Assembly: GCF_001194135.2 (NCBI RefSeq)
Contig: NC_068991.1
Location: 7,757,806-7,814,371 of the forward strand
Length of the DNA stretch: 56,566 nt
Reading direction: 5' to 3'
Source: Octopus bimaculoides
Lineage: Eukaryota
Shown here: piece by piece, positions 30,104-56,566 of the stretch
How the letters are laid out: each line of letters starts with the position of its first letter
How positions within the stretch are numbered: position 1 is the stretch's first letter
Made by a program: the position numbers and the translations under genes
Notes under the pieces: generated by a model
The model's input: the letters and a program-made list of their open reading frames with translations, nothing else
Database searches by the model: none
Told to the model about the DNA's origin: nothing

Positions 30104-30438
30104 NNNNNNNNNNNNNNNNNNNNNNNNNNNNNNNNNNNNNNNNNNNNNNNNNNNNNNNNNNNNNNNNNNNNNNNNNNNNNNNNNNNNNNNNNNNNNNNNN
30201 NNNNNNNNNNNNNNNNNNNNNNNNNNNNNNNNNNNNNNNNNNNNNNNNNNNNNNNNNNNNNNNNNNNNNNNNNNNNNNNNNNNNNNNNNNNNNNNNNNNN
30301 NNNNNNNNNNNNNNNNNNNNNNNNNNNNNNNNNNNNNNNNNNNNNNNNNNNNNNNNNNNNNNNNNNNNNNNNNNNNNNNNNNNNNNNNNNNNNNNNNNNN
30401 NNNNNNNNNNNNNNNNNNNNNNNNNNNNNNNNNNNNNN
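30104..30438. other. Assembly gap hiding part of an LRGUK exon; other gaps 4409-4641, 40212-40781, 47060-47235, 48655-49078
   Basis: N runs. Confidence 1.
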
Positions 30439-30467
30439 AAAACTTGGAAACTCTTGTCAATTTAAGG
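30439..30467 (+). CDS. LRGUK: LRGUK LRR exon, 3' part only (NLETLVNLR); 5' part in N-gap
   Basis: Fits expected LRR 'GLEDLKALQ'; donor AGG|gtgagc, phase 0. Confidence 0.75.
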
Positions 30468-38370: not shown

Positions 38371-39076
38371 GTAAATACATTATTTAATTTAGTAATATAA
38401 AGTGATGTAGCCATCCATAGTGCCAGTCTTAGGTACATAAGAGATCCTAAGGGTATATAGTATACTCTTAGTAGAGTAAAAATAAAATAGTAGGGAGGTG
38501 AAAGCGTGGCTGTGTGGCAAGAAGCAGGCTTCTCAACCACATGGTTCTGGGTTCAGTCCCACTGCAGTGGCTTGGATGCTTTTTATGTGGTACCAAAACC
38601 CATAGAGATACTTGGCCGCACCAGTAGGACAACTAAGAGTAGAGAGGTGGTTATGGCCACAAAGGGCATGCCTGTATTTATGGGTGGCCATGACTTTACT
38701 TCACTTAGCTTGACATGTCTTCTCAAGCACAGCAAATTACCAGAAGTCTCAGTCCCTTGTCATCTCCTCTGTGAGGCTCAACTTCTGAAGATCATTTCGC
38801 ACCATTTTGTCCCATGTCTTCCTGGGTCTACTCTTTTAAAAGGTTCCCTCTAGAGTTAGAGACTGGCACTTATGCAGCTGTCCTAACCCATACGCATCAC
38901 ATGGCCACACCAGCACAATGCCAAACCATGTTTACAATCTACTTTCAATTCCCGCTTAAAACAATTTTACATGGCTTTCATTACATCCCACTTCTCCATC
39001 CCTCTAAACCTAAAACCTTGAGCTTCATCGAAAGAAATCACTATAAAAAAATAAAAGCATGTGTTTTGTATTTCAG

Positions 39077-39602
39077 GTCGTCTAGCATGGATATAGATGA
39101 AGAAGTGAGATCTCGAAGAAATTCCAGAACAGGAACACTGAAAGACTTCAAAGCATTACAAGTTATTCAGGGAGATTCAAGAGGACTACTAACAGATCTC
39201 GAGGAAGTTCCAAGTGAAATCGTGAGAAGAGCATCAATAGAATTTGAAGAATTAGAGAAATTCCACAGAGGTTCCAGGAGAGGAACAGCATTAAATCTAG
39301 AAAAAATAGTGGACATTCATGGTGATTCCAAGAGATGTTCAGGCTTTTTAGTAAATAGTGTAGAGACAAATGGAACACTGAAAAACCTGACATCTAGGCC
39401 TGACATATATATTAATGACATAAATGTTAATTATGATAAATTAACTCAATCAGTTGATAAATATGACAACAAAACCAAATATTCTGATACTTATCTTGAA
39501 GAAGTGGCAAAAGCTAAATCATTTAGTGAAAGTAATGTAACAGGTCGACTGGGTTCATCCAAGCTTTCAGTTGTGCCCCCAATACAGACTTCTACGACTT
39601 GA
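39077..39602 (+). CDS. LRGUK: LRGUK terminal coding exon (SSSMDIDEEVRSRRNS...PPIQTSTT*)
   Basis: tttcag| acceptor, open to TGA 39600-39602, AATAAA at about 39690. Confidence 0.8.
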
Positions 39603-41275
39603 TGTAATTGTTATTAAGAAAGGATAATTACTCAGAAAAAAAATCTATGTTACAAATTTTGACATTTTTTCATTGTAAATAGCATTGGCAATAAAAGGGA
39701 CTTAAAATGTGTCATATCTTCAACAATTCTTCATTCTAAAATACAATCAGCAGAATTTCTGGAGACTGGAAACGGTGATGTTTAACCTCGATTCAGCAAA
39801 GCTATGATCCTGGATTCTACATGCAAAGTTGTTTTAAATATTATGTACTTTAATGCACTAAAACACCCCCACCCCCCGCCTGTATGCACTGCTCAAATTG
39901 GAGTACGTCTAATATACATACATCAGATCTATTTTAAAACGGGGGCACCAGTATTTTCTTAACGAAACACTTTGAAACTTGGGACACTGGTAGAATGTGT
40001 CATATAAAACATCTTTTACTCTTAGTCTTCTTAACAGAAAAAAGGAATTTGCAAGTTATTCCATGTTAAAGTTGTCGTATTTCTGTAATTTCAACCAATT
40101 ACTGACGTCTATTCAGCTGAATAGAGTTACTGCTGGGCGGTCATAAAAATGTTATTCCCTGTGACATATTTCATCCGGTTTAATCGTAATTTATACGCAT
40201 ATATTGTTTATNNNNNNNNNNNNNNNNNNNNNNNNNNNNNNNNNNNNNNNNNNNNNNNNNNNNNNNNNNNNNNNNNNNNNNNNNNNNNNNNNNNNNNNNN
40301 NNNNNNNNNNNNNNNNNNNNNNNNNNNNNNNNNNNNNNNNNNNNNNNNNNNNNNNNNNNNNNNNNNNNNNNNNNNNNNNNNNNNNNNNNNNNNNNNNNNN
40401 NNNNNNNNNNNNNNNNNNNNNNNNNNNNNNNNNNNNNNNNNNNNNNNNNNNNNNNNNNNNNNNNNNNNNNNNNNNNNNNNNNNNNNNNNNNNNNNNNNNN
40501 NNNNNNNNNNNNNNNNNNNNNNNNNNNNNNNNNNNNNNNNNNNNNNNNNNNNNNNNNNNNNNNNNNNNNNNNNNNNNNNNNNNNNNNNNNNNNNNNNNNN
40601 NNNNNNNNNNNNNNNNNNNNNNNNNNNNNNNNNNNNNNNNNNNNNNNNNNNNNNNNNNNNNNNNNNNNNNNNNNNNNNNNNNNNNNNNNNNNNNNNNNNN
40701 NNNNNNNNNNNNNNNNNNNNNNNNNNNNNNNNNNNNNNNNNNNNNNNNNNNNNNNNNNNNNNNNNNNNNNNNNNNNNNNNNAAACACAGACACACACACA
40801 TACATATACACACATATATGACGGGCTTCTTTCAGTTTCCGTCTACCAAATCCACTCACAAGGCTTTGGTCGGCCTGAGGCTATAGTAGAAGACACTTGC
40901 CCAAGGTGCCACACGGTAGGACTGAACCCAGAACCATGTGGTTCATTAGCAAGTTACTTACCACACAGCCACTCCTACACCTATACAATGCAAGACCTGA
41001 TACCGTTTGATTGACCCAGAATAAACTTAGGAACTTGAGCATATTGAACAAAATGCTTAGCAGCATTTCTTCCACCACTTTACATTCTGAGTTCAAACTC
41101 CACCTAGGTTAACTTTGCCTTTCATTTCTTCAGGATTGATAAAATAAAGTACCAGTCATATACTGGGGTCGATGTAATCAGCTCAAAAGTTGCTGGCCTT
41201 GAAATTGTGGGTAGATGGACAATTCGTTGACAGACAGTTGGCCAACAGACAACTTACAGACAGGACAATTGTGTG

Positions 41276-42490: not shown

Positions 42491-44749
42491 TCAAAGTAAA
42501 TTCATTTTTCTTTGTTTTAAAACAAATTTCTCAATAATATTTTGATATTTTTCAATCACAGAGGATTGCAGTCCATGACACCGAGAAAGAACGTGTTTAG
42601 TTGTAAAGTCTAATGAAGGTTTCGATGTAGAGGGGTTATTTTCAACTGGGTTTTTATCCTGTTCAATAAAACTAGATACCAGCCTCTGACGTTGATTATT
42701 ATACTGCTTTGTCATTTTACAATTTCCATTGCTTGACAAAGCGCACAAATTGGAATAAAAACTTCTCGGTTCAATCCTAACGTTGTCGACTTCTTTGGGT
42801 CTCTTAGAGAGTCTAGAATAGTCTTTTAAATGTTGCCCAACAGAAAATGGCCGCTTGCGTTTCTTTGAAGAAACACTTTCTTTTTTACCTGTGTTTTCCT
42901 TTACTACACCTGGTTCGTTTAAATCATATATTGTCGACATATTACTGTCGGATGATGAATTGCCACAATTTACAGATTCAGCAACCAAGTTTTCTGAATC
43001 ACGTATTATTTCATCATCAATGTCCTCAGTTTCTTTCTCTCTTTCGTCTAAATTATTGTTTACTGAGACTTCATTTAACTGTTCTAGCATTGGTAACTGC
43101 TCTCTGCAGTTTGCAGCAGTTTTTGATATTTTAAAAGGCTTTTCTGACCGTTTGCCATTATTTGCATTCGTTCTGCAAATATTTTCAATTACATTTAGAT
43201 CAAAAAGTGGAACTGAAGCCTCCTGTTCTTCACTATTATCAGAAGACTGTTGCGACTGATTTTCAAATAAAGAAATTTTTTCAGCAAAATTTTCTTTTGA
43301 AGAATCAGGTATTTCTGAATTCCTTCCAATGAATTTGTTTTGTTTATTACTCTTAGTTGGAGTCTTCATAATTGAAATTCCTGTTACTATATCTTGTATG
43401 TCACAGTCAGAATTCCTGTTTACTATATTTAGGGAAGACATTTGTAAAGCTTCTACAGTCTTACTATTAGAATCAGTTTTAGAACTGTTCGGAGAATTCT
43501 CTGAAACTGATGTAATATTTTTATGGTTTTCTTCATTTATTTTTGGTTCTAAGTGATCGCTTTTCTCTTTTGGGTTTTGAGATGATTTTATGGGAGATTC
43601 AAAAACAACTCCTTTGGGAATACGACGTCTTAGGACAGATCTTTGGATTTTCTTTTTTACAGCTGATGACCAAATTTTTTTGGCATTATCTCCAGGAATA
43701 GGTAGAATGGGGTTTTTGAGAAAAGTTGGCATGGTATATTTTTTGATGGGACTTGTGGAAAGGTATTGATTAAAACAACTCATATCTGCACGATGAGACA
43801 GTGAAATTTTAAATGGTCCTTTTGCGTTTGCACTAACAATTGGAATTATTTGCTTGGGATTAATTCTTTTAACAAATTCTACAAGCTCTGGGTATGAGCT
43901 ATGATCTGAATAAGGTATCACATAGATATCATTTTGGTTGCAATATGGAGAACCATCAAGCCCTTCATAAAGTGCCGTTGGAAATATTGCAACTGTTGGT
44001 TTTGCTAATTTATCTAAATACTTCTCTGTTACTAAGTAAAACGGAACAACTCGTAGTCGGCATTCGTGTTCAACAGTATCAATTTGAAAAACATCAGGGG
44101 TTTCAATAAGTTCAAAATATTCAAACATTTTCTGAGGTACAGCAATAAATTCCTGAAAATGCTTTGCAATTTCAATGAGTAAATTTGGTTTACCTAAACT
44201 GCTCATACCGAAAATGATATCATGTCCTGGATAATAGCTGATCAATTCCATAATCCAGTCTGTTGCTTGAGTACGAGTTTGAAACTTACATTTTGGATCA
44301 CAAAAAGTATTGTCAAGATATAAAGTATCGACACTATAGTTAAGTGAAGACAAATAAGAGTCAGTTATTACCTTGGGTTCATATCGAAAGTCACCAGTAT
44401 AAAGCATACAACCAAAGTAACCTTGAAATAAGAGCATAACTGACCCAGGACAATGATTAGCATCAATTGCTACGACAGTAACTATTTCAGAATTTGTAGA
44501 GTCGATGGGAATTAAAACCGGAGTGTCTAGCTCCAAGGGGTGAATTAATTCTTGAGCAATACTAAATTTTTTACAAATGAGGTCTCCTGTTACTTTGGAG
44601 CAGTAGATTGGTTGATTCCAAGAAGATGTGAGGCCGACTGTATGGTCACTGTGAAAATGTGTCAGGAAAAATAGTTTAGCATCAGGACATTTACGAATCT
44701 GCCAGAAATCCACAGCAATGGGAGTACCTTTAATAATGTGTCCATTCAT
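42491..44749 (-). CDS. DCLRE1B: 5' exonuclease Apollo/SNM1B (metallo-beta-lactamase + beta-CASP), 752 aa, single coding exon
   Basis: MNGHIIKGTPIAVDFW start typical of Apollo; motifs HFHSDH, DANHCPGS, YTGDFR, LYLDNT, PYSDHSS. A 3' splice site (ttttcttttggttccaag) lies 9 nt upstream of the ATG, so the 44782 ORF start is intronic. Confidence 0.95.
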   Translation of the reverse strand: MNGHIIKGTPIAVDFWQIRKCPDAKLFFLTHFHSDHTVGLTSSWNQPIYCSKVTGDLICKKFSIAQELIHPLELDTPVLIPIDSTNSEIVTVVAIDANHCPGSVMLLFQGYFGCMLYTGDFRYEPKVITDSYLSSLNYSVDTLYLDNTFCDPKCKFQTRTQATDWIMELISYYPGHDIIFGMSSLGKPNLLIEIAKHFQEFIAVPQKMFEYFELIETPDVFQIDTVEHECRLRVVPFYLVTEKYLDKLAKPTVAIFPTALYEGLDGSPYCNQNDIYVIPYSDHSSYPELVEFVKRINPKQIIPIVSANAKGPFKISLSHRADMSCFNQYLSTSPIKKYTMPTFLKNPILPIPGDNAKKIWSSAVKKKIQRSVLRRRIPKGVVFESPIKSSQNPKEKSDHLEPKINEENHKNITSVSENSPNSSKTDSNSKTVEALQMSSLNIVNRNSDCDIQDIVTGISIMKTPTKSNKQNKFIGRNSEIPDSSKENFAEKISLFENQSQQSSDNSEEQEASVPLFDLNVIENICRTNANNGKRSEKPFKISKTAANCREQLPMLEQLNEVSVNNNLDEREKETEDIDDEIIRDSENLVAESVNCGNSSSDSNMSTIYDLNEPGVVKENTGKKESVSSKKRKRPFSVGQHLKDYSRLSKRPKEVDNVRIEPRSFYSNLCALSSNGNCKMTKQYNNQRQRLVSSFIEQDKNPVENNPSTSKPSLDFTTKHVLSRCHGLQSSVIEKYQNIIEKFVLKQRKMNLL

Positions 44750-46450
44750 TATGGTTTCCTTGGAACCAAAAAGAAAAAACAAATGAAATTAGAAAAAAAT
44801 AATGAATGAAGAAATACTTAAGCAAATAAATAGGATTAAATTATTTTTACTTAATGATTTTTACTTAATGATTAAGAAAGTACAAAATAAACAAACGAAG
44901 TTAGTTCAAGTATGCTTAAGACGTACGTTAACTTCTAAACACAACTTCACTGCAGCTAACCGTGGAGAAAAATTTCTTAGTTATAGTAAAAGTGTAAACA
45001 CACCATTGTCAGCTCAGTGGTGTCCTCTGTTGGACCCCTTGATGCATTTCTGGCTCATTATGACTTCAGTTGAGGTTACCAAAGAAAGATAGTCCTGAGC
45101 TGATCAGAAAGCCATAACTTTATGAGTCGGTCAATACTTGTGACTGATTTGCATTTGCAGACTACTCAGTCAAAATAAATATCTAATATTAGTACAGAGC
45201 AGTGATGAGAAACAAACAAACTTTAGATTACTTCAAATATGTTTGGGACATATTTTAACTTCTAAATGCAACTTCACTGCAGTTAACCATAGAAAAAAAT
45301 TACATGCTTATACTTATGTATTTATTTAGACCGGGGGTGGGGTCTGAAAGCATAAATTAGTCACTAGTATTAATAAAGCTGCTATGTCTTTCTTGTCTGA
45401 TACTAACTTAAAAGCCGCACTCCATGTGGACTTTTAAGCTAGCTCCTGCAGCGGGCTAAATAGGTTTGCAGCCCAAAACTAACGAGTGCTAAATAGCTTG
45501 ACTATAAAAATGTCTATAGTAACTATGTGGCCTGGTGGGTTTGATCAGAGGTTAAGGACAGATGAGAAATAATTCTGTAATGCAATCATTCTATTGTTCC
45601 AGTCCCAAGTTGAGCTCCAACTGCTGGCCAATTTGTCCCAAAGTTCTAATCTCGACATAAAATTAATGAAACGAATGTCATTTATCTCCCTCTTGAACTC
45701 TGACATCATCTGACAAACACCAACGAAGATGGTGTGAATCAGCCAAGCTTTACCTGCTAAAAATGTTATAACAAAAATATCTATTTTTTCAGAAAGTTAC
45801 GAGGAATCGAAGTCAAGTTGTGTGAATTATCCGAAATTTCTCTCCCCATCTCAGAAAATGTTTCCACAAATAACCATCTGAAACGTATCTCTGGAAAATT
45901 TCATTGCAAAAATAAAAAAAAGGCATTTTTCAAAGGGTTATGAAAAATAACGAAATCGACAGAGGAGGAGGAACAGATCTGGGTTACACCGAAAATTGTA
46001 AAAGCCTATGTTTATATCAATACTTTGACAAATTGTTTTCTGGTTTGCACGCGACAATCTCTTACGCAATGTTTAGCTTTAATCCATTAATATTGTATTT
46101 TATTTTTATTAATTAAAATATTTAACTTTTTCAAAAGCAACAGTTAAGCATTTATTTATTCCGTTCGCTTCCTCCGAATATCCAAATCTATTTTCGTATT
46201 TTCACGAATTGTTTTGGTTTTATTGTCAAGCTTGCAAAATATATACCAAAAGCCAAATATCGCCAATCTTTTTCTTTTTTTCTTTTATCATTTGTTCTTA
46301 ACTTGACAAAAGTCGAGTGGAACTGTTAGAACTGAATTTTATACAATATATGGTAAACAGAATTATAAGCCTTATCCTATTTACAAAATTTCAATCACCA
46401 CCGTTTCCTATTTCACGCAGAATTCGCACATCCAAATATATATATATATA

Positions 46451-46657: not shown

Positions 46658-48139
46658 GAATAATATATAGTCTGTTGACTAATTACACCACTGGTAGTAA
46701 ATTAAATTTCTTAATTTTTTGCTACTCTTAGACTTATACATATTTATATATATATATATATATATATACATAATACGTACACACATTGAGAAAAGGTGTG
46801 TTTATGTTTCAACAGTATTCACTTAATATCTCATCTTTTAGCTCATTATTTATAATAGCTTACAGTAAAAACTCTTAACAAATATTAGCTAAAATAAAGT
46901 ATTATATTCCGTAAAATCCTTGACAAAACATAATTCAACTGATACTAGAGATATAGGAAGACAGGAGCTTAGGTGTAAAACTGGTTGTTTACCTTTCAAA
47001 TAAGTGTATCAACGTTAAGTCTCCAGATAAACATATTTACAATAAGCAAAACAAGGTTTNNNNNNNNNNNNNNNNNNNNNNNNNNNNNNNNNNNNNNNNN
47101 NNNNNNNNNNNNNNNNNNNNNNNNNNNNNNNNNNNNNNNNNNNNNNNNNNNNNNNNNNNNNNNNNNNNNNNNNNNNNNNNNNNNNNNNNNNNNNNNNNNN
47201 NNNNNNNNNNNNNNNNNNNNNNNNNNNNNNNNNNNCCCTAAATTCTTCATTTTAACTTTTTTCAGAAATTTTTTTTTTTTTTTTCAAAATATACGGAAAA
47301 ATACGGAGATTATGATTTCGAAAAAAATTTCCAAAAATTTTTCTAATTAGGGATAGGATTAGGGTTAGGGTTGGGTTACAGAAAAGAGTGAAAAATGAAG
47401 AAATTGGGTGGGAGGAGTAGCGGAAAAAATTTCAAAATTCTGGTTTTTGGCAATTTTCAGGAATCTCCGTATCCGAAAAGGTAGGTTTTTGGGAAAAAAA
47501 AATTTTTTTTTAAATTTGCGAGAAAATGGGTCGTTGGGGGTCGAAAGGAAGTCTTTCCATGGCTAACTATCAGGTGGGCCTTACAACAAAAAATTTTCTG
47601 TTAGGCGCGCCATTCAGAAAGTCCCACAGGCCACACGTTGGCTATGGCTGCTCTGCGCAATCTACAAAATTGTGCATTGACTCCTCTTTTGAACTATGGT
47701 CTTCCCCCTATAGCAGACAGAGCATATATCATAATCATCATCATCGTTTAACGTCCCCTTTCCATGCTAGCATGGGTTGGACGATTTGACTGAGGACTGG
47801 CAAGCCAGAAGGCTGCACCAGGCTCCAATCTGATTTGACAGCCTTTTTCATGAAGTATTAATTTCAGTATCAGCAGTTGAACTGTTAATGCAACCATGAT
47901 GTTTTAATGGTCTGATGACCTAGCTTTCTTTATTTGCATTAATTTGTGAATATACAATTGTATTGTATAATGCATGAAGAATGTTTGAAACAGCTGTAAC
48001 CTTATAAAAGCTACATGGTTAAATGGATCTATATTCACCTCTATCACCTCCTGACTTTATATGTTTTATATGCTCCTCACAGAATAGTTCCATTGTACGG
48101 ATTTTCTGGGTTTTGAGTTACATAGACACTTCATATTAT

Positions 48140-48654
48140 ATTACTCTACTTCGCCTGTCTTTACGTTCTGAGTTCAAATTCCGCTGAGGTTGACTTTGCT
48201 TTCCATCCTTTCGAGGTCGATAAATTAAGTACCAGTTGCGTACTGGAGTCGATCTAATCGACTGGCCCCCTCCCTCAAAATTTCGGGCCTTGTGCCTAGA
48301 GTAGAAAAGATTATATTACCCTATTTTTTGAAGGCGGTGAGCTGGCAAAATTGTTAGTATGCTGGGTAAAACGCTTAGTAGCATTTTGTCCGTCTTAAAG
48401 ACGTTCTGAGTTCAAATACTGCCGAGGTCGACTTTGCCTTTCATCCTTTCGGGGTCAATAAACTAAGTACCAGTGGAGTACTGGGGTCGATGTAATCGAC
48501 CAGTCTCCTCCCTCAAATTTTCAGGTCTTGGAACTATAGTAGAAAGGATATTATATTATCCTTCTTTTTGAATCGTTAGCACGCCAGGAAAAATATTAAG
48601 CGGCATTTCGTCCGTCTTCGTGTTCTGAGTTCGAATTTTGCCGAGGTTGACTTT
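48140..48654 (+). mobile_element. Three head-to-tail family-B SINE copies ending in an N-gap
   Basis: Repeated gttctgagttcaaat..gccgaggt.gactttgcctttcatcctttc unit three times. Confidence 0.8.
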
Positions 48655-49807
48655 NNNNNNNNNNNNNNNNNNNNNNNNNNNNNNNNNNNNNNNNNNNNNN
48701 NNNNNNNNNNNNNNNNNNNNNNNNNNNNNNNNNNNNNNNNNNNNNNNNNNNNNNNNNNNNNNNNNNNNNNNNNNNNNNNNNNNNNNNNNNNNNNNNNNNN
48801 NNNNNNNNNNNNNNNNNNNNNNNNNNNNNNNNNNNNNNNNNNNNNNNNNNNNNNNNNNNNNNNNNNNNNNNNNNNNNNNNNNNNNNNNNNNNNNNNNNNN
48901 NNNNNNNNNNNNNNNNNNNNNNNNNNNNNNNNNNNNNNNNNNNNNNNNNNNNNNNNNNNNNNNNNNNNNNNNNNNNNNNNNNNNNNNNNNNNNNNNNNNN
49001 NNNNNNNNNNNNNNNNNNNNNNNNNNNNNNNNNNNNNNNNNNNNNNNNNNNNNNNNNNNNNNNNNNNNNNNNNNNNNNATGCAAACAGGAAAAATTGAGT
49101 ATATGTATATTTTTATTAATATTTAGCAGAAGTGCAAGAGTGACTCAAGGTCCGAGAGTGTTGTGCATTGGCATTCATATATGTTTGTGAAGTTTAGCAA
49201 AACGTGAGGAAAGCTAAGCTACTATAGAAGTTCTTTATATTACTGCCATAATAGAACTATTTCTCAAACCTAACTACAACTATCTAATAAGTTCGTTTAA
49301 ATAACAGTTGTACCTACACACGCGCGCGCGCACACACACTGATACAGAGGGGAAAAATTAACGAAAGCGGGACGGGAGAACGTAGTTAGCAAAATGAATT
49401 AAAAAAAACAAAAACGTCATTGGGCTTATGGTCTTTTTTTAAAACATAAATTTCGAAAGATCAAATTCACTCTGACAGACATATTCACTGAGTATACTCT
49501 AAATACTATTTTATGTTTAATAAATTCCTGTTTGATACAGACTGTGTTACCTAAAGATGATTAAGGTAACATTTTCCAAATAAGAAATATAGATACGTTG
49601 TGCAAGTGCTTATTATATGCACTTAGGCGTTGAGCTCTATTCGCGGAATGTATGTTTATATTGTAAATAGTCATATTTGAGCTCTATAGAGAAATGGAAA
49701 GAAGCCGAATTTCAAAGTGATAATGAAGAAACCTTCAAATAATTCATTCAGATTTATAATGTCGTTTATTGATGGAAGTTTGGTAAAAAACGAACAGAAA
49801 TTCCGTG

Positions 49808-50008
49808 ATGGACAGCGCACTTTCCTACTTCGCTCAGTATCTGTGCAACTTGGAGAAATTTGATGAATTCAAAAATTGGCTTGATAACTTGATCAAGTCT
49901 AAACCATTGTTATTTGAAGAGCTAAAAGAGGACGAAGATTTCATATTTTGTATTATTAGTTTACGAATTCACGAAGAAAAATTCTGCGAAGCTTTTGAAC
50001 TAATTGAG
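49808..50008 (+). CDS. SIX-domain/TALE homeobox gene exon 1 (MDSALSYFAQYLCNLEKFDEFKNWL...EKFCEAFELIE)
   Basis: 67 codons, GAG|gtaagt donor; resembles the first half of the SIX domain (..L.RFL....NESVL.A.A...FH.GNF.ELY.ILE). Confidence 0.8.
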
Positions 50009-51935
50009 GTAAGTCTTATCAGCTTATAATGACATTAACATTTTTTTTTAATGTTCAAATGATGTCTTTGGCAATCGGGACGAAATGGAGAAATCAGTTG
50101 ATGTCTCTAGTGTCGTTCTCATAGAAAACTTCCCATTATCAGCTTGATACTATAATGATATTGTTCCTGCCCATTAGTTACATCGATGCAAATTAGCTTT
50201 ATTAATAATATTCTCCCGATTTATTTGAAACTAAGGTGCTCGCTCATTTAAAAATGGCGTACATCTTCTTTCAATGTATGTTTCTTGTAACTAAAATATC
50301 AACACTTTTCTAATTTCCTCGCTCAATTTAAACATTGCAAACTGATTTCTTCCTATTGCTCTTCAAATTGTGACGATCAAGTCGTTTTTATTCGGGTTTT
50401 AAAAAAGCATTTTGTTTATATTAATTTAAAAATTGCTTTACGTTTCTTTTACATAATGAGAAACTGGGAGCCTCCTATGGCGATTTCTCAGAATCCTGTC
50501 CAATTCATTATTCGTTTTTATTCACTAATTAAAAAAAAAAAAGGTCCCTCATTGCAACTTCTTATGGTAATAGTATTTAGCGTTCCTAAATAAATAGAAC
50601 ATTCTCTCATTCTTTTGCGTTTCAATCTTTTATTTGTCTGCGGCCATGGTGAGGGGCACCTGCCGCAAATGTTTAGTTGACCATATTGAACCCATTATTT
50701 AATTTTTCGATATCTATTTGTTGAACTGCTAGATTACGGGGCATAAAGAGACAAAACATAAACAAAGGCACGTATACACACACCTACACTAAACCTCAGA
50801 ACTCCTTAACCAAACAATAATGTTGGCGCATATTCTTTTTCATTTATTGCCTGTGATTTCCATATTGCTTTCTTACTGAGACAACAAAATAATATTAACG
50901 ATTAATGATTTTTAAAACGCATGAAAGGCAATTTAGTCCCACCGCCCAAGAGAGCATTCTTGTAGAATCGAGTTGGAAATTATTTAGTCTGCTAAAAACC
51001 GTAATTTCTTGTGATCTCTATGTTTTAAGTATCGTAGATTACGAATCTATAAAAGCTAATTTAAAAAAAAAGACATTTTAAACATCTAAGATTATGATTC
51101 CTTAAAATTACGTGTAACAATTCTGAAGAAAAGAAATCGAAAAAGAGTCAAAACTGAAAAATTATGGAAGGAGAGGGAAATCTTCCTTTTTTGCAGATTC
51201 ATAAAAATTACGGCTTTTGGTGTCCCGCATAATTTCCGACGCTATTCTACAGAAAGACCACCCCCTAGCAAATAAATTTGTGTCTACGAATTCTTTAAGA
51301 CTCAACAGAGCAATCGAACTATTTCACCCCTGCGTAACAACACACTGGTATTGTATTCCTCCGCCGCTAGCTTTTAAAGGGTAGAGGAACGCAGTACCAG
51401 TGTGTTGTTACGCAGGAGCGAAATAGACTACCCTGCTACTAGGTCATGTCCTGACTTCGTGATTTGGGAATATTTTGTAAAACGACTAAGAACGATTGCA
51501 ATGTTTACAATTCAAATTGTGTGGGAGTGCTTCGTATGTCGTAATGGAAAAACAAATGAGTGAAAAATAATTGAATTGATGCGAAATATTTTTCCAATTT
51601 CAATTTGCTGGTCTCGGCGCAGGCGTGGCTATGTGATTAAGATGCTTGCTTCCCAACTATGTGGTCTTGGGTTCAGTCCCACCGTGCGGGTCTTGGGTTC
51701 AGTCCCACCGTGTGGTCTTGGGTTCAGTCCCACCGTCTCACAATGCCTAAACGAAATATCAAAACACAACATTGGTATATGTATAGAATAGAGTCGGAAA
51801 AAGCTTTGCAGTATTTTATTAAATTAAGATGTGAGTTTTATTGTAGGTTGTAATTACTGTAGAAGAGTACGGGTTGACAAAATAGTCTGTACTTGGTCGT
51901 TTGACTTGCTAGAAATAGCAGCTAAATCTCCCCTA

Positions 51936-52217
51936 GGCGATCTTTCGGTACTAGATCCCGTAACTTCCGGTCGTTGTGCGCACGCATACTGAATACATTA
52001 TCGTATAGTGTGTTTATGTTTTTAAATGACTTGAAAATATGAAAACACAACATTAAATAGAAAAAAAAAAATGAATGGCCCACTAAACTCAAACCTTCTC
52101 CCCTCAGATTCATACAGTTCCCAAACTTTAAACACATAAACATACTATACGATAATGTAATCAATATGCGTGTGCACAACGACCGGAAGTTATGGGATCC
52201 AGTACCGAAAGATCGCC
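51936..52217. mobile_element. MITE-like element with ~90-bp TIRs in intron 1 of the SIX/TALE gene
   Basis: 51936-52026 is the reverse complement of 52127-52217 with few mismatches. Confidence 0.7.
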
Positions 52218-52582
52218 CTGTGAAACCATGTCCAGCCATGGGGAAATATCTTGTTTGAAATAGGTGAGATTTGGTGATAGGAAAAGCATCATGGATCTAG
52301 TCGGTTTGGCTGCCAGCATCTATTCTGTTCGAACTGATTTCATATTCAGTGTAATGATACACTTTTATTGGCTAATGAATGATGTAAAAATCATTTTCGC
52401 TATAAATCAATAAATAACTAGTTATTAGCAATTTGATAATTTTAGCCAATTGTAAGCCACATTCATGCCTATTTCCATAGTAACAAGCAGAGCATGAGAA
52501 CTCTTTTGTCTCTTCTTTCTGAATTCAGCCAGTTTTCGTTTGTCGTTATTGCATACTTTTTAAGAAATGATTTCTTTTACAG

Positions 52583-52704
52583 AATGGAAAATTTACAAAC
52601 CCAGAAAGATTTATTTCACTTTGGGATAAAGCTCACTATAAATTAAAAGAAAAAGAAAAAGGTTATCCGTTAACCTCGCTTCTGCGTTTCAGGAGCAGAA
52701 AAAA
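52583..52704 (+). CDS. SIX-domain/TALE homeobox gene exon 2 (NGKFTNPERFISLWDKAHYKLKEKEKGYPLTSLLRFRSRK)
   Basis: ttttacag| acceptor, AA|gtaagt donor; LWxKAHYxxxEKxxGxPL...YRxRxK hallmark of the SIX domain. Confidence 0.9.
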
Positions 52705-53099
52705 GTAAGTTATGTTGTCTATTTCCTTTTGGCATTTTGATACTTGTTTCTGAATCTCTCCAGGTCATTGCTCGCTGAGATGTAACAGATTCTTACTGAG
52801 GTATGCAAACAAGGTAGGCATAGGCTGTTTTGGGGAGTGGATTTCTTCGAGAGAGAACATGAGAAAATAATCAACCCCAGTACTACTGGATTGGTACTTT
52901 AGTTATCAACCTCAAAAGAATGAAACACAAAATTGACCATGGAAGGATTTGAACTTGGAGTGCTCACAGTCAGATTGAATACCATAAGGCATTCTGGCTG
53001 ATGTTCTAATAATACTACCAAGGCACCATGTATGCACATGCACCAGTCCACATATATATTTATACATATACACACATATTTAGTATATAAAATGATGTC

Positions 53100-53340
53100 C
53101 TATGCAAGGGGTTGGATTGAAGAGAGGAAAACACAGCAGAACTGGTGGAAAGCATCTTCAAATGCAGTCACTGCCTTTAAGACTGCTACTCCCATGTGAG
53201 CCTGTGCAGCCACAGCAGACACTCTCGTGTGAGCCTGTGCAACCACAGTAGACACTGCACTGCTATCAACAGCTGACACAAAATTCTCCAGACACAGATC
53301 CATGGTCTTTGGTTTTTCAAAACCAACAGTTTCCATAAAC
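53100..53340 (+). mobile_element. RTE-type LINE 3' remnant with internal ~33-bp duplication
   Basis: FKCSHCL*DCYSHVSLCSHSRHSRVSLCNHSRHC frame. Confidence 0.55.
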
Positions 53341-53916
53341 AGACAGATAAATAGATATAGATAGTAGTACATGATGATAGTTTCAAATTTTGGTACACTG
53401 CCAACAATTTAAAGGGAGGAAAATAGGTGATTATATTTATTCCAGTGTTCATCTGGTACTTATTGTACTTATTTTATTGATCCTGAAAAAAGTGAAAGGC
53501 AAAGTTGACCTTGGCGGAATGTGAAATCAGAATGTTAAGAGGTGATTTTGCAATTGTAATATACCATAAAAGCTTCTTTTTTTTTTCCGCAATGGGAACA
53601 GTTAAACTCTTCCTTTCAATCCACTTGAAACAGTTTTTGATGACAAATATTAACCCAACTCTACTAATTGTTCTGCGGCCCTTTACCAGTTCTGTCTTTT
53701 TTGTTACAAAATGGTGTAACACAATATAGAACACAACTGTAGGATCTGTTATTACTGTGCGATATAAAATGGAGAAGTGATGTATTGTACAATATAGGAA
53801 TTTGAAATCATTTATCCTTTTGTCTTTCAAAAACTATCATTTCTTCCTGTGGTTTTAAACACCATATGACAATTCTACAGTAATATTAATTGATTTTTTT
53901 GTTCTTTTTTGACTAG

Positions 53917-54806
53917 ACATCCACCACCTAAAAGTATTTGTCCAAGTGGTAAGAGGCCTTCAAGTAACTTACCTGAACATGCTCGTCAAACATTAAAACA
54001 GTGGTTTGATAAACATGCTGATTATCCTTATCCAAACGAAAATGAAAAAAAACAATTGGTGGAACAGAGTGGTTTGATATTATCTCAAGTGAAGACTTGG
54101 TTTGCCAATACCAGACGTAGAAAAAAGATAACAGCACCAAAATCAAATTTAAAATATGGAAAGATTATGAAAAATTACCATCAGTATAATTGCTCCTCAC
54201 AAATATTAACTGATGATGTTCATTATGCTTTAGATACTTCTATGAAGAAAGTTGGGTTGTATCCTGATGAAGAGAATGTTGGTCAGATAAAGATGGCTAA
54301 TAAAAAACTACAGGACCAGTGTTTGTTTAAAGTTGAAGAATCTGGAAATATTTATAAAGAAGATGATATTATTTCAAAAGAGATAGAACAAAATAAAGAA
54401 CATGGTTACTGCTTAGAAAATAAAGAAATGAAAATCAAGTCAGACACAGAAGATTCTCATGAAACAAAGCAATTAAATTCAATATTATTTGAAAATGCTT
54501 ATCTTGTTTTACAAACCCAAAACTTTGACATTCCAAAAGAAAACAATTTTTGTCACTTTGTTTCTGAGCAGAATGTAGATACTGTCGGAAATGCTTGTAA
54601 TACTTATAACTTACCAATAGATGGTGAATATCCCGATAATTTGAACATCCTTCAGAATTGTGCAGAAATTAAAAGCATTGAAAATGATTTATTTCCAAAT
54701 GAAAGCAGTGAAGCTGTTACTTTTATTCCAAATGACACAGTTTTGATGCCAAATATTAACCCAACTCTGCCAGTCACTCTGTGGCAATTGCCACTTCTAC
54801 CTCCAG
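53917..54806 (+). CDS. SIX-domain/TALE homeobox gene exon 3: homeodomain (~53948-54136) plus Asn/Glu-rich region; unspliced reading ends at TAG 54850
   Basis: gactag| acceptor in phase with exon 2; WFDKHADYPYP TALE loop, QVKTWFANTRRR helix 3; donor G|gtttga at 54807. Confidence 0.9.
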
Positions 54807-55567
54807 GTTTGAATTTATTCTATTTTAATATTTCTTGTAATATATCTTAGTCTTTGATTCAAATAAACAATTTACTTCCCTTAAAAAGTGGTAAACTTAT
54901 TTACAAAATATTTTTTCATGTTTTTCATTCAGTTTTATTTCTCTCAGTGCTTTTTCTTTAGATCTCTAAGATTTTTCCTCATTTAACCTTGATTAAGTTC
55001 TTTTCCTGGATCAACTACCTTTCATCTTCCGGGAGGCAGGGGGCGATGAAATAAGAACCAGTCAAGAGCTCATTATCCTTCTCCTCTTCATCATCATTTA
55101 ATGTCTGTTTTCCATGCTGGCATAGGTTTGGACAATATGACAGGAATTGGCAAGGCCAGTACCCACACCAAGTTCCATAGTCTGATTTGGCTTGGTTTCT
55201 ACAACTGGATGCCTTTCCTAATGCCAACCACAAATTGAACTGGATGCTTTTTACGTGGCACCAGAGTTGATATAATTGCTTATATCTCTCACTTCAAATT
55301 TGGGATCTTGTGTCTGTGGGATATGAGCTGTTTTGACACAGACCTTTTGGCACCACCTATTTTGGTGGCATTTATTCAGTGCTGACTTATTTGACATCTA
55401 CATTATGCATAACTGATTTACACAAACATTTACTTTCATTAAAAATAAACACTACTACTAATAAATATTTTGCTAAATTTCATGATCCTTTTAGTAAAGT
55501 ATTTATTTACTCCATATATTTTTCTCATTGCTGTCTTTTATATTGTCACATTTTGCTCAATATCTAG

Positions 55568-55851
55568 ATTGCCTGATGCCTTTTACCAACCAGAATATCA
55601 CCACAAACTCAAATTGGCAGACACCTGACAATTGTAAATTTATTTCTGACCTTAACAATACTTCATTTATTCACTGTGACCAAACCTCTCAATGTGCTGA
55701 TAGTAAGCAGTTCGTTCCTGATACACCCAGAAAAAACAGCCAACAGACAGAATATGATGTTTCAGATAATGCAAGGAACATGATGTCACATGAAATGTTG
55801 AATAATTCACATCAAGATAACGAAGATCCAAATATACATAATATAAAGTAA
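55568..55851 (+). CDS. SIX-domain/TALE homeobox gene probable exon 4 (DCLMPFTNQNITTNSNW...EDPNIHNIK*)
   Basis: atctag| acceptor, G+AT=D restores a 94-codon open frame; ends at TAA 55849-55851 or at overlapping donor AA|gtaagt. Confidence 0.6.
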
Positions 55852-56204
55852 GTAGTTTTCAATCAATTTCTTTTTTTAATTTTTTTTATCAATTTCATTA
55901 ACATCAAACCGTCTAGGTTTAGTAGTTAGGTTGTTACACTCACAACCACAAGATTGTAGCTTTGATTCTCAAAGACAACTACAACAACAACAACAAATTC
56001 AGACTTTAAAAAAAAATGTAAGAAAACTGAAGAAAACTTTACACATTATAGGTGGTGCCTTGTGTTCTTGAGCAGAACACTTCATTTCACATAACTCCCT
56101 TCCATTTACATGTAGATGAGTAACCTCTGCGATGGACTAGCATCCTATCCAGTGGGAAAGGTTGTGATCTCATTCACTTATACACCATGGAAACAAAGTC
56201 CTAG

Positions 56205-56566
56205 TACAGTTCTATATTTAAGAGATGAGGAATTATTTACATTATTTACATTATCTACATTTGACGGATATTCAAATGTGAAAGCAGTGATTAATGTAAG
56301 TAGCCGACGTCTGGAAGACTCCGAAGAAGCCGTACTGAACAAAGGTCTCAACTTTGTGACAACCATCAAGCGCATTCCATACTTGGACATAATAGCCCCT
56401 ATTGAAGAGATAGCGGTAAAGATACCGAAAGCTCAGGGAGATGAACTAAGGTGGAAGGTGAGACAGGTACTGGAGAAAGCGAAACTTCCCAAACCAAACA
56501 TCACTAAGGAAGAAAAGTTCGCTATCAAAAGGCTACAAGGAGACAGTTCCATCATAGTTCTCCCAG
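56205..56566 (+). mobile_element. Penelope-like retroelement ORF, N-terminal part, runs off window
   Basis: Stop-free frame VINVSSRRLEDSEEAVLNKGLNF...PKPNITKEEKFAIKRLQGDSSIIVLP, the typical pre-RT segment of Penelope elements (followed by ADKG). Confidence 0.85.

What the first reader, a model, noticed from the sequence alone, without database searches (positions are those of the whole stretch)
49808..55851. Hybrid homeobox gene: SIX domain joined to a TALE-class homeodomain (ANHX-like) in a cephalopod
Seen: exons 49808-50008, 52583-52704 and 53917-onward splice in frame with canonical sites. They give a SIX-like domain (LWDKAHY..EKEKGYPL...RFRSRKKHPPP) directly followed by a homeodomain. Established: SINE/SIX homeodomains have a short loop (WYxxNPYP) and Lys50; TALE homeodomains have three extra loop residues. 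Here the loop is WFDKHADYPYP (TALE length) and helix 3 is WFAN (Ala50, as in IRX/MKX). The linker PPPKSICPSG and WFANxRRR recall mammalian ANHX, usually treated as a lineage-restricted oddity. Inference: an ancient ANHX-type SINE/TALE intermediate, or a spiralian novel-TALE gene that kept or gained a SIX domain. It could recruit EYA/Groucho partners to non-SIX DNA sites. The ORF track shows only the homeodomain exon, so the fusion is easy to miss.
Basis: partly seen in the sequence, partly recalled or inferred. Interest (0 to 1): 0.85.

Follow-up and report, generated by a model that had tools for sequence, protein, structure and literature searches.

The report
Octopus ANHX/Six-X homeobox gene
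The window holds a real, spliced and expressed octopod gene whose protein joins a SIX-type domain to a TALE-type homeodomain. It belongs to an old, animal-wide gene family that has been described three separate times under unrelated names: ANHX in mammals, Six-X in jellyfish and TALE-XIII in molluscs and worms.

Summary
Exons 49808-50008, 52583-52704, 53917-54806 and 55568-55847 have GT/AG borders, and RNA contigs from two or three related species show all three junctions. The protein passes Pfam SIX1_SD (53 bits) and Homeobox_KN (59 bits). Its homeodomain loop is three residues longer than in SIX1-6, and helix 3 reads WFANTRRR. An AlphaFold model (pLDDT 95.6) matches SIX1 overall and MEIS/EXD in the homeodomain.

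One correction: the gene does not end at 55851. The donor at 55847 is used, and two more exons lie beyond the window.

It is not unique. The same architecture, the linker motif FRxR[KQ][KR]xPPPxx[IV]CPxG and two intron positions recur in Argonauta (syntenic), Saccoglossus, Nematostella and tamarin ANHX. Architecture and motif also occur in bivalves, gastropods, an annelid, a nemertean, a priapulid, a scorpion, sea urchins, amphioxus and corals; a sponge relative has the architecture.

Parts of this family are already published, apparently without being linked: csSix-X (2012, already called an Irx/Six hybrid), Cgi_TALE5/TALE-XIII (homeodomain only) and ANHX (mammals only).

The octopus gene is a new member of a known but under-recognised family. 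DNA specificity and EYA/Groucho binding are untested.

The parts
49808..50008 (+). Exon 1. It holds the start codon at 49808 and aa 1-67, the N-terminal two thirds of the SIX domain (predicted helices 1-5). It ends ..ELIE|GTAAGT, a phase-0 intron.
   Evidence: Sequence and translation. An RNA contig joins 50008|52583 in X1. X5 covers 49813-49973. An X8 contig from organism C ends at 50008 and runs on for 22 letters. The same phase-0 intron position occurs in Argonauta, Saccoglossus, Nematostella and tamarin ANHX.
52583..52704 (+). Exon 2. It holds aa 68-107 plus two bases of codon 108, the C-terminal part of the SIX domain (..LWDKAHYKLKEKEKGYPLTSLLRFRSRK). The donor is AAA|GTAAGT, a phase-2 intron.
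   Evidence: The X1 contig carries 45 nt of exon 1, the whole of exon 2, and 5 nt that do not fit the intron. The X6 contig joins 52704|53917. The X8 contig covers exactly 52583-52704, with 96 nt before it and 8 nt after it. The phase-2 intron one codon before xPPP is shared with Argonauta, Saccoglossus, Nematostella and ANHX.
53917..54806 (+). Exon 3. It holds the linker, the whole homeodomain, and about 220 aa of fast-evolving C-terminal sequence. The donor is CCAG|GT.
   Evidence: X5 and X6 contigs begin at 53917 joined to exon 2 and end at 54806 joined to 55568. The same junction is seen in X1 and X3. Against a sister species, dN/dS is 0.22 for linker plus homeodomain and 1.27 for the tail.
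53918..53950 (+). Family-specific linker HPPPKSICPSG (aa 109-119). Canonical SIX proteins have [11 protein letters not shown] at this place.
   Evidence: Alignments. The tamarin ANHX equivalent is [11 protein letters not shown].
53948..54136 (+). TALE-length homeodomain of 63 aa, G119-A181.
   Evidence: Pfam Homeobox_KN scores 59 bits against 29.7 for Homeodomain. The alignment with human homeodomains shows three extra loop residues. A TALE HMM scores 72.7 bits against 43.3 for a SIX HMM. Foldseek gives rmsd 0.4-0.7 A to MEIS and EXD homeodomains.
54008..54034 (+). Loop between helices 1 and 2, DKHADYPYP (aa 139-147), which carries the three-residue extension and the PYP motif.
54098..54121 (+). 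Recognition helix core WFANTRRR (aa 169-176). It has Ala50, Asn51, Arg53, Arg54 and Arg55. It matches IRX TWFANARRR except at position 52.
55568..55847 (+). Exon 4 (aa 405-497, with split codons at both ends). The donor AAA|GTAAGT is used, and the coding sequence continues beyond the window.
   Evidence: The X6 contig covers 55566-55847 and carries 21 more letters that are not in the window. Argonauta aa 431-519 align here, and its exons 5-6 have no counterpart in the window.

Best explanation
Identity. The locus is the 5' four exons of the octopod orthologue of an ancient, animal-wide homeobox family. The family's protein has a SIX domain, a linker FRxR[KQ][KR]xPPPxx[IV]CPxG, and a TALE-length homeodomain with helix 3 reading WFAN(A/T)RRR. 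Members have been published separately as mammalian ANHX, cnidarian Six-X and spiralian TALE-XIII/Cgi_TALE5.

Shown here:
- The gene is spliced as proposed and transcribed at a low level in a minority of RNA libraries.
- Both domains are intact and modelled with high confidence.
- The homeodomain is under purifying selection, while the C-terminal tail evolves almost neutrally.
- The family is distinct from the canonical SIX1/2 and SIX3/6 proteins (full length) and, on the homeodomain only, from SIX4/5. The SIX domain and the homeodomain give the same split, so this is not a recent domain shuffle.

Inferred mechanism:
- It is a sequence-specific nuclear transcription factor.
- Positions 47-55 of the homeodomain (TWFANTRRR) are IRX-like rather than SIX-like (SIX has NWFKNRRQR). 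It should therefore read IRX/MKX-type ACA-core sites, not the SIX TCAGGTTTC/MEF3 site.
- The SIX domain should supply a cofactor surface. The hydrophobic face of helix 1 is kept at the positions equivalent to SIX1 V14, V17 and L21. Whether the partner is EYA, Groucho or something else is unknown.
- A germ-line role is a lead from relatives only. ANHX is a testis and spermatogonia marker, and csSix-X is expressed in gonads.
For: Gene structure and expression:
- Exons and reading frame.
- All junctions are seen in RNA contigs of organisms A, B and C.

Domains:
- Pfam SIX1_SD at 53 bits and Homeobox_KN at 59 bits.
- The best solved-structure sequence hit is SIX1 (4egc) across both domains, E 1e-19, followed by the PKNOX1, MEIS and TGIF homeodomains.
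- AlphaFold model with pLDDT 95.6. Foldseek's top hit is 4egc_A over 181 columns, and the homeodomain matches TALE homeodomains at 0.4-0.7 A.

Family:
- Hits covering both domains in Argonauta, five bivalves, four gastropods, Owenia, Lineus, Priapulus, Centruroides, Saccoglossus, two sea urchins, Branchiostoma, Nematostella, Craspedacusta, corals and Sycon. Every member scanned with Pfam (the 10 best hits plus Sycon, Saccoglossus, Nematostella, Diadema and Lineus) has SIX1_SD plus Homeobox_KN; the rest rest on single alignments spanning both domains.
- The signature motif is present across the family.
- Tamarin ANHX, rebuilt from genomic DNA with GT/AG borders, passes SIX1_SD (30.0 bits; cut-off 27.4) and Homeobox_KN. 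BLASTP against the octopus protein gives E 3e-18.
- Two intron positions and phases are shared by octopus, Argonauta, Saccoglossus, Nematostella and ANHX.
- A DRMBL gene lies just upstream on the opposite strand in both the window and Argonauta.
- Bootstrap support for the split between canonical SIX and the family is 99.7%, 92% and 91%.
- dN/dS is 0.22 for the homeodomain.

Literature:
- csSix-X as a hybrid gene.
- Cgi_TALE5 and TALE-XIII homeodomains match my hits P0007 and P0011, both of which carry a SIX domain.
- ANHX was left unclassified and found only in mammals. It was grouped with the SIX class by clustering.
Against: - ANHX is very divergent. It is 34% identical to the octopus protein over 105 aa. 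Its loop is only one residue longer than in SIX, and the PYP motif is lost. Its SIX domain is as far from the family as from canonical SIX (0.21 against 0.20 identity). Its membership therefore rests on the linker, helix 3, the introns and a neighbour-joining split, not on a resolved clade.
- Relationships inside the family are unresolved, with bootstrap values mostly below 50.
- No full-length SIX4/5 was in the tree.
- The homeodomain-only tree does not separate the family cleanly from TALE or SIX.
- Intron positions of canonical SIX genes were not checked here.
- Nothing in this work tests DNA binding, cofactors or the tissue of expression. Three deep RNA runs from 2026 show no exon coverage.
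Confidence: 0.8

Rival explanations
1. Mammalian ANHX is not an orthologue. The invertebrate Six-X/TALE-XIII family is real and ancient, but ANHX arose separately in mammals from a SIX (or other) gene and converged on WFAN and the PPP..CP.G linker.
For: The ANHX SIX domain is equally distant from the family and from canonical SIX. Its loop is only one residue longer than in SIX. In the homeodomain-only tree it sits near SIX and the sea urchins. No non-mammalian vertebrate member was seen among the named hits. Zhong and Holland found it only in mammals.
Against: It shares the linker motif, WFANxRRR and two intron positions with identical phases. It falls on the family side of a 99.7% split. Sea urchins and one coral show the same two-residue loop shortening inside the family. 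Amphioxus and the ambulacrarians have members, so the gene was present in deuterostome ancestors.
Confidence: 0.12
2. This is a spiralian-specific 'novel' TALE gene (TALE-XIII) that captured a SIX-domain exon by shuffling.
For: Spiralian surveys filed the homeodomain as a lophotrochozoan TALE clade, or as 'n.d., only in oyster'.
Against: The same two-domain architecture, linker and introns occur in Nematostella, Saccoglossus and a mammal; architecture and linker also occur in a priapulid and a scorpion, and a sponge relative has the architecture. The SIX-domain-only and homeodomain-only analyses give the same split.
Confidence: 0.03
3. This is a fast-evolving cephalopod paralogue of a canonical SIX gene (Six1/2, Six3/6 or Six4/5) that independently gained three loop residues.
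For: Automatic annotation calls its relatives 'SIX1', 'SIX2-like', 'SIX6-like' or 'sine oculis'. The best solved-structure hit is SIX1.
Against: It lacks the diagnostic ETSY, ETVY or QKTH motif, lacks Lys50, and has a different linker. It is excluded from the canonical group at 99.7%.
Confidence: 0.03
4. This is an artefact: exons of two genes joined by eye, or a decaying pseudogene.
For: No single contig spans exons 1-4. One X6 contig retains the last 93 nt of intron 1. Expression is low, and the C-terminal tail has dN/dS of about 1.3. The ancestral upstream start codon is out of frame.
Against: Overlapping RNA contigs chain exons 1-2-3 (X1, X8) and 2-3 and 3-4 (X5, X6). The reading frame is intact. 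The homeodomain has dN/dS of 0.22. The Argonauta orthologue is collinear and syntenic.
Confidence: 0.02

Closest known systems
Mammalian ANHX (anomalous homeobox, LOC647589; Zhong & Holland 2011)
   Same: A SIX1_SD hit followed by a homeodomain with WFANxRRR. The linker is [14 protein letters not shown] against RKKHPPPKSICPSG in octopus. There is a phase-0 intron after ..LLE (octopus ..LIE) and a phase-2 intron in the codon before xPPP.
   Different: The ANHX loop is only one residue longer than in SIX and lacks PYP. ANHX has an extra intron inside the homeodomain. Identity is 34%. ANHX is published as mammal-only and unclassifiable. Human ANHX is testis and spermatogonia specific; the octopus tissue is unknown.
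Cnidarian Six-X (Craspedacusta csSix-X JF819724; Nematostella XP_001633591; Hroudova et al. 2012)
   Same: The same two-domain architecture, linker, TALE-length loop and TWFANARRR. Identity is 43% over aa 16-179 (P0017). The Nematostella gene shares both intron positions. The authors already called it an Irx/Six 'hybrid gene'.
   Different: It was described as conserved within Cnidaria, with no link to ANHX or to bilaterian genes. Nematostella has extra introns in the homeodomain.
Spiralian TALE clade XIII / Cgi_TALE5 (Paps et al. 2015; Barton-Owen et al. 2018)
   Same: The oyster Cg_TALE-XIII_5 homeodomain is about 49% identical to the octopus homeodomain (31 of 63 residues, my own count from the sequences). 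It is near-identical to my Saccostrea hit P0007, and the Patella TALE-XIII homeodomain matches P0011. Both hits carry a SIX domain.
   Different: It was classified from the homeodomain alone, as a lophotrochozoan TALE clade or as 'n.d.'. I found no mention of its SIX domain in either paper. Cephalopods were not sampled for the TALE tree. Clade support was described as marginal.
Canonical SIX/SINE class (SIX1/2, SIX3/6, SIX4/5)
   Same: The SIX-domain fold (Foldseek top hit 4egc_A) and the order of the two domains.
   Different: Canonical SIX proteins have a 60-aa homeodomain, Lys50, helix 3 NWFKNRRQR, the linker [11 protein letters not shown] and the ETSY/ETVY/QKTH motif. The tree separates them at 99.7%.
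IRX and MKX (TALE class)
   Same: The three-residue loop extension, PYP, and a recognition helix TWFANARRR or NWFANARRR. IRX gives the best score against the family homeodomain HMM, 80 bits.
   Different: Pfam finds no family other than SIX1_SD and the two homeodomain models, and a SIX domain lies upstream instead. The N-terminal arm also differs.

Membership tests
SINE/SIX class | A SIX domain of about 110-120 aa immediately N-terminal to the homeodomain | tested here: met
   Pfam SIX1_SD covers aa 9-113 at 53.2 bits (cut-off 27.4). phmmer against SIX1 (4egc) gives E 1e-19. The AlphaFold model's top Foldseek hit is 4egc_A, E 3e-7.
SINE/SIX class | A 60-aa homeodomain with Lys50 (WFKNRRQR) | tested here: not met
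   The homeodomain is 63 aa with Ala50 and WFANTRRR.
SINE/SIX class | [quoted passage not shown] | tested here: not met
   The motif position reads RPSS. The gene is excluded from the canonical group at 99.7% bootstrap. Six4/5 was represented by the homeodomain only.
TALE class | Three extra residues between helix 1 and helix 2 | tested here: met
   Alignment with human SIX and TALE homeodomains. Homeobox_KN is matched over its full profile, positions 1-40.
TALE class | A small residue at position 50, and NARRR-type helix 3 | tested here: met
   Ala50 and N-T-R-R-R. A TALE HMM scores 72.7 bits against 43.3 for a SIX HMM.
TALE class (canonical families IRX, MKX, MEIS, PKNOX, PBX, TGIF) | The family-specific flanking domains (MEIS/PKNOX N-terminal domain, PBC domain, IRO box) | tested here: not met
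   Pfam finds only SIX1_SD, Homeobox_KN and Homeodomain in the 405-aa product. The IRO box has no Pfam model, so it was not scored separately.
ANHX / Six-X / TALE-XIII family | SIX domain, linker FRxR[KQ][KR]xPPPxx[IV]CPxG, and homeodomain with WFAN(x)RRR | tested here: met
   The octopus protein reads RFRSRKKHPPPKSICPSG ... WFANTRRR. The consensus comes from 23 members.
ANHX / Six-X / TALE-XIII family | A shared gene structure: a phase-0 intron in the SIX domain after ..L[LI][EK], and a phase-2 intron in the codon before xPPP | tested here: met
   Octopus, Argonauta, Saccoglossus and Nematostella, and tamarin ANHX. Whether canonical SIX genes lack these introns was not tested; attempts to fetch genomic loci for them failed.
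ANHX / Six-X / TALE-XIII family | Orthology supported by a tree and by synteny | tested here: inconclusive
   The family side of the split has 99.7% support, but the branching inside it is unresolved. Synteny was shown only with Argonauta, through the DRMBL neighbour. Synteny with deuterostome loci was not examined.
SPILE (spiralian TALE expansion, Morino et al. 2017) | Placement in the SPILE clade, and early cleavage-stage expression | not tested
   Barton-Owen et al. list TALE-XIII among the non-SPILE TALE sequences of their regeneration transcriptome. Oyster TALE5 is expressed after the trochophore stage, unlike the early TALE genes. I built no tree with SPILE genes.

The most novel reading that the evidence does not exclude
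ANHX, Six-X and TALE-XIII form one pan-metazoan orthology group. This group would be a fourth ancient SIX-domain family that keeps the ancestral TALE-type homeodomain. On that reading the canonical SIX (SINE) class is a derived TALE lineage that lost the three loop residues and switched Ala50 to Lys. The family might also have a conserved germ-line role from cnidarians to humans.
Probability: 0.3. Interest if true: 0.8.

Novelty: new member of a known kind. Interest (0 to 1): 0.58.

Why it matters
The octopus gene is an ordinary member of its family. Following it up shows that three sets of 'orphan' homeobox genes, in three separate literatures, share one architecture, one linker motif and one gene structure. 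The three sets are:
- human ANHX, published as unclassifiable and mammal-only;
- cnidarian Six-X, published as a hybrid of unclear origin;
- spiralian TALE-XIII/Cgi_TALE5, counted among lineage-specific TALE genes.

If the orthology holds under proper phylogenetics, several things follow.
- Animal homeobox classification gains an ancient family that sits between the SINE and TALE classes.
- One supposed lophotrochozoan TALE clade, whose oyster member was thought to be oyster-only, is removed from the list.
- The old question of how the SIX class relates to TALE genes becomes testable with a living two-domain representative.
- Human ANHX gains tractable invertebrate models.
- Automatic annotation of these genes is inconsistent (SIX1, SIX2-like, SIX6-like, IRX-5, mucin-2-like, uncharacterized) and could be corrected.

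Tried and rejected
- The word-indexed protein search was too insensitive. With the protein it returned one hit, an unspliced ORF of the homeodomain exon from a sister species. With the family profile it returned seven. With the human ANHX homeodomain it returned only exon fragments. The exhaustive HMMER search was what revealed the family.
- Two nematode hits, P0158 and P0159, proved to be canonical SIX proteins (SIX-domain scores 123-129 bits, WFKNRRQR) and not family members.
- A Homeobox_KN hit alone does not prove TALE class, because canonical SIX homeodomains also hit it partially. I relied on the loop alignment instead.
- The homeodomain-only neighbour-joining tree cannot place the family relative to TALE and SIX, so I make no rooting claim.
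- I tried to fetch genomic loci of canonical SIX genes to compare intron positions. Three were not on record and one was a transcript contig.
- Three deep RNA runs from 2026 (X10-X12, about 6% sampled) and two 2015 runs (X23, X24) show no exon coverage. Tissue names are coded, so the site of expression could not be read.
- The supplements of Paps et al. 2015 held no matching homeodomain string. The Hong Kong oyster paper does not mention TALE-XIII.
- Literature searches for ANHX, 'anomalous homeobox', 'Six-X' and SIX domain with TALE found no paper joining the three names.
- I considered the upstream ATG at 49759 as the true start and rejected it for this assembly. It is in another frame that closes after 34 codons.

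Full report

These are the ATG at 49808, GAG|GTAAGT at 50008/50009, cag|AAT at 52583, AAA|GTAAGT at 52704/52705 and tag|ACA at 53917. Joined, they read in one frame.

The product hits Pfam SIX1_SD (aa 9-113, E 4.9e-14, 53.2 bits against a cut-off of 27.4). It also hits Homeobox_KN over the whole profile (aa 137-176, E 4.2e-16, 59 bits). The generic Homeodomain model scores only 29.7 bits.

Among solved structures the best sequence match is human SIX1 (4egc), E 1e-19. That alignment runs through both domains and needs a three-residue gap in the SIX1 loop. The next matches are TALE homeodomains: PKNOX1, MEIS and TGIF.

I aligned the homeodomain with human homeodomains taken from the supplement of Zhong & Holland 2011. 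The octopus loop (WFDKHADYPYP) is three residues longer than in SIX1-6 and the same length as in IRX, MKX, MEIS, PKNOX, TGIF and PBX. Residue 50 is Ala, as in IRX and MKX.

An AlphaFold2 model of aa 1-180, built with a 23-sequence family alignment, has mean pLDDT 95.6 and pTM 0.77. It has seven helices in the SIX domain and three in the homeodomain. Foldseek against the PDB puts SIX1-EYA2 (4egc_A) first, over 181 columns with E 3e-7. The homeodomain part superposes on MEIS and EXD homeodomains at 0.4-0.7 A.

**2. Are the exons joined in RNA?**

Run X4 covers introns and exons evenly at a depth of about 10-18, so it is DNA. Runs X1, X5, X6 and X7 (organism A) cover only exons and repeats, so they behave as RNA.

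- An X1 contig of 174 nt carries 45 nt of exon 1, all of exon 2 and 5 more letters that do not fit the intron. It joins 50008|52583.
- An X6 contig of 509 nt joins 52704|53917 and runs 294 nt into the homeodomain exon. An X5 contig of 803 nt begins 38 nt before 53917.
- X1, X5 and X6, and X3 from sister species B, join 54806|55568.
- In species C, X9 is DNA and X8 is RNA. The X8 contigs break exactly at 50008, 52583, 52704 and 53917. One of them carries 96 nt before exon 2 and 8 nt after it.

Exon 3 ends at 54806 and exon 4 begins at 55568.

One correction is needed. An X6 contig leaves exon 4 at 55847 (AAA|GTAAGT) with 21 further letters that lie nowhere in the window. The TAA at 55849-55851 is therefore intronic, and the gene runs off the window. 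The Argonauta orthologue has two more coding exons, aa 520-587.

The X6 contig also retains the last 93 nt of intron 1. That stretch has an in-frame stop, so it is most simply read as incompletely processed RNA.

**3. What is it related to?**

An exhaustive HMMER search of 1.84 billion representative proteins gave 17 hits below 1e-30.

The best hit is a hypothetical protein of the octopod *Argonauta hians* (67% identity over aa 1-191). Its gene is collinear with the window, exon by exon. It has a DRMBL (SNM1-type) gene just upstream on the opposite strand, as does the window at 42491-44782. It is the orthologue, and the window comes from an octopod.

Beyond that, single alignments spanning both domains at 33-49% identity come from many groups (names):

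- Bivalves: Mytilus, Mizuhopecten, Sinanodonta, Saccostrea, Mercenaria (a sixth, Mactra, at 33% identity, was not scanned with Pfam).
- Gastropods: Gigantopelta, Elysia, Nucella, Patella.
- An annelid (Owenia), a nemertean (Lineus), a priapulid (Priapulus) and a scorpion (Centruroides).
- A hemichordate (Saccoglossus), sea urchins (Diadema, Lytechinus) and amphioxus.
- Cnidarians: Craspedacusta, Nematostella, Desmophyllum, Montipora.
- A calcareous sponge (Sycon).

Every member scanned with Pfam (fifteen proteins) has SIX1_SD plus Homeobox_KN.

The members share a signature that canonical SIX proteins lack:
- Family: ..FRxR[KQ][KR]xPPPxx[IV]CPxGxRx[TS]xxLPxxAxxxLxxW[FL]xxHxxxPYP[ST]xxEKxxLAxxxGLxxxQVKTWFANARRR
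- Canonical SIX: ..[74 protein letters not shown]

The source databases name these proteins inconsistently: 'SIX1', 'SIX2-like', 'SIX6-like', 'sine oculis-like', 'IRX-5', 'mucin-2-like' or 'uncharacterized'.

**4. Is mammalian ANHX one of them?**

The human ANHX homeodomain is printed in the supplement of Zhong & Holland 2011. It reads [60 protein letters not shown].

Searching with it returned only exon fragments. One of them, from the tamarin *Saguinus oedipus*, led to 20 kb of genomic DNA (L001). In that DNA I found four exons with GT/AG borders. They encode:
- MQSF...AARQLLE
- [42 protein letters not shown](R)
- [41 protein letters not shown]
- [26 protein letters not shown]...

This product passes SIX1_SD (30.0 bits; cut-off 27.4) and Homeobox_KN (36.2 bits). 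It aligns to the octopus protein at 34% identity over 105 aa, E 3e-18.

The first two ANHX introns match the octopus introns 1 and 2 in position and phase. One is a phase-0 intron after ..LLE (octopus ..LIE). The other is a phase-2 intron in the codon before NPPP (octopus HPPP). Argonauta, Saccoglossus and Nematostella have introns at the same two places with the same phases.

ANHX differs in three ways. It has a third intron inside the homeodomain. Its loop is only one residue longer than in SIX. It has lost the PYP motif. Sea urchins and one coral show a similar two-residue shortening of the loop.

**5. Trees**

I built a neighbour-joining tree on 181 aligned columns of SIX domain plus homeodomain, with the loop-indel columns dropped. 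It had 25 family members, including tamarin ANHX and Sycon, and 17 canonical SIX proteins.

- The split between canonical SIX and the family has 99.7% support in 300 bootstrap replicates.
- The SIX-domain columns alone give 92%, and the linker-plus-homeodomain columns alone give 91%. The two domains tell the same story, so there is no sign of a recent fusion.
- Inside the family only octopus plus Argonauta (100%) and a few other close pairs are resolved.
- The ANHX SIX domain is no closer to the family than to canonical SIX (0.21 against 0.20 identity).
- No full-length SIX4/5 was available. Human SIX4/5 homeodomains group with SIX1/2/3/6.
- The homeodomain-only tree leaves the family between TALE and SIX.

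HMM scores are clearer. The octopus homeodomain scores 72.7 bits on a human TALE model and 43.3 on a human SIX model. The family model scores IRX highest, at 80 bits.

**6. What was already known?**

Three literatures hold pieces of this family.

(a) Hroudova et al. 2012 cloned csSix-X from *Craspedacusta*. This is my hit P0017. They noted its relative in Nematostella, XP_001633591, which is my hit P0044. They pointed out the WFAN helix, 'typical of Irx', next to a SIX domain. They called it a hybrid gene and proposed either an Irx-Six fusion or descent from an ancient atypical ancestor. They found expression in gonads and at the mouth opening.

(b) Paps et al. 2015 listed oyster Cgi_TALE5 as a TALE gene of undetermined family, expressed after the trochophore stage. 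Barton-Owen et al. 2018 placed it with Patella, Capitella, Lingula and Spirobranchus sequences in a new clade, 'TALE-XIII', built from homeodomains only. The printed Cg_TALE-XIII_5 and Pv_TALE-XIII homeodomains are near-identical to my Saccostrea (P0007) and Patella (P0011) hits, and both of those carry a SIX domain.

(c) Zhong & Holland 2011 found LOC647589 (ANHX) only in mammals and could not classify it. Paps & Holland 2018 list it with SIX genes in a clustering table. In humans it is testis specific and a proposed spermatogonia marker.

I found no paper in the searchable library that joins these three names or reports a cephalopod member. That is absence from one library, not proof of absence.

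**7. How it most likely works**

Shown here:
- The transcript is spliced and of low abundance.
- Both domains are intact and confidently folded.
- The linker and homeodomain are under purifying selection. Against a sister species, dN/dS is 0.22, from 7 synonymous and 7 non-synonymous changes.
- The roughly 220-aa tail evolves almost neutrally, at 1.27.

Inferred:
- It is a sequence-specific transcription factor.
- Homeodomain positions 47, 50, 51, 54 and 55 (T, A, N, R, R) equal those of IRX and differ from SIX (N, K, N, Q, R). From what is established about these positions, an IRX/MKX-like ACA-core site is more likely than the SIX MEF3 site.
- Helix 1 of the SIX domain keeps hydrophobic residues at the positions equivalent to SIX1 V14, V17 and L21 (alignment). 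In SIX1 that helix binds EYA. A cofactor-binding role is therefore plausible, but the partner is unknown.
- A germ-line role is suggested only by ANHX and csSix-X.

**8. Verdict**

The interpretation (a SIX-domain plus TALE-homeodomain gene of ANHX type, and ancient) is supported.

The gene is a new member, and apparently the first cephalopod one, of a family that is known in fragments. The wider point is that ANHX, Six-X and TALE-XIII look like one pan-metazoan family. This is moderately interesting and needs proper phylogenetics. The claim that the family is a SINE/TALE intermediate, and the claims about EYA or Groucho, remain open.

Noticed in passing
window 49759-49863: An upstream ATG at 49759 lies in a different frame from the main ORF. 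It encodes MSFIDGSLVKNEQKF..., which resembles the N-terminus of the Argonauta orthologue (MTSFIEESFFKKEF...). That frame closes after 34 codons. One base fewer in the A6 run at 49785-49790 would join it to the main frame. Either the start codon moved to 49808 in this species, leaving an overlapping upstream ORF, or there is a one-base indel. The DNA run X4 agrees with the window over 49700-50385.
   Followed up: partly
window 42491-44782 (- strand): A single 763-aa ORF has an HxHxDH motif and a Pfam DRMBL hit, so it is an SNM1/DCLRE1-type DNA-repair metallo-beta-lactamase. It is transcribed away from the homeobox gene. The same neighbour in the same orientation lies upstream of the Argonauta orthologue (L002 4913-7378).
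   Followed up: partly
window 51500-52500, 52900-53700, 54900-55300, 56035-56290: The introns and the 3' flank hold very high-copy repeats. Word depth reaches 63,000 in the DNA run X4 and 214,000 in RNA-like runs. Many chimeric joints and loose ends occur at 53493, 55088, 55123-55128 and 55231. These look like interspersed elements that are also abundantly transcribed.
   Followed up: no
window 56263-56566: An open frame runs off the end of the window (..SRRLEDSEEAVLNKGLNFVTTIKRIPYLDIIAPIEE..). It has steady RNA depth of about 75-320 in X5-X7 and several fixed differences, but no Pfam hit. It is probably part of a transcribed repeat or retroelement.
   Followed up: partly
window 52490-52582: One RNA contig (X6, 509 nt) is spliced at 52704|53917 but retains the last 93 nt of intron 1, which contains an in-frame TGA at 52568-52570. 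This could be partly processed RNA or a minor transcript starting inside intron 1. Such a transcript could not encode the SIX domain.
   Followed up: no
window 38814-39602 (+ strand): A 262-aa ORF with no Pfam hit. It may be an exon of another gene lying between the assembly gaps.
   Followed up: partly
window about 4100-4600, 30100-30460, 40210-40810, 47060-47300, 48600-49100: Runs of N (assembly gaps), flanked by microsatellite-like TA/CA-rich sequence that produces spurious long ORFs.
   Followed up: no
related proteins P0030/P0043 (Branchiostoma), P0081/P0149 (sea urchins), P0090 (Sycon): Residue 50 and loop length vary within the family. Amphioxus has Gln50 (WFQNTRRR). The sea urchins have Thr or Ser at position 50 and a loop two residues shorter. 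The sponge has WLANARRR and a loop one residue longer. DNA specificity may not be uniform across the family.
   Followed up: no
human homeodomain table (Zhong & Holland 2011 supplement) compared with ANHX: ANHX shares the string VYNWFAN with the HNF-class homeodomains HNF1A, HNF1B and HMBOX1. This is probably convergence, but nothing here explains it.
   Followed up: no
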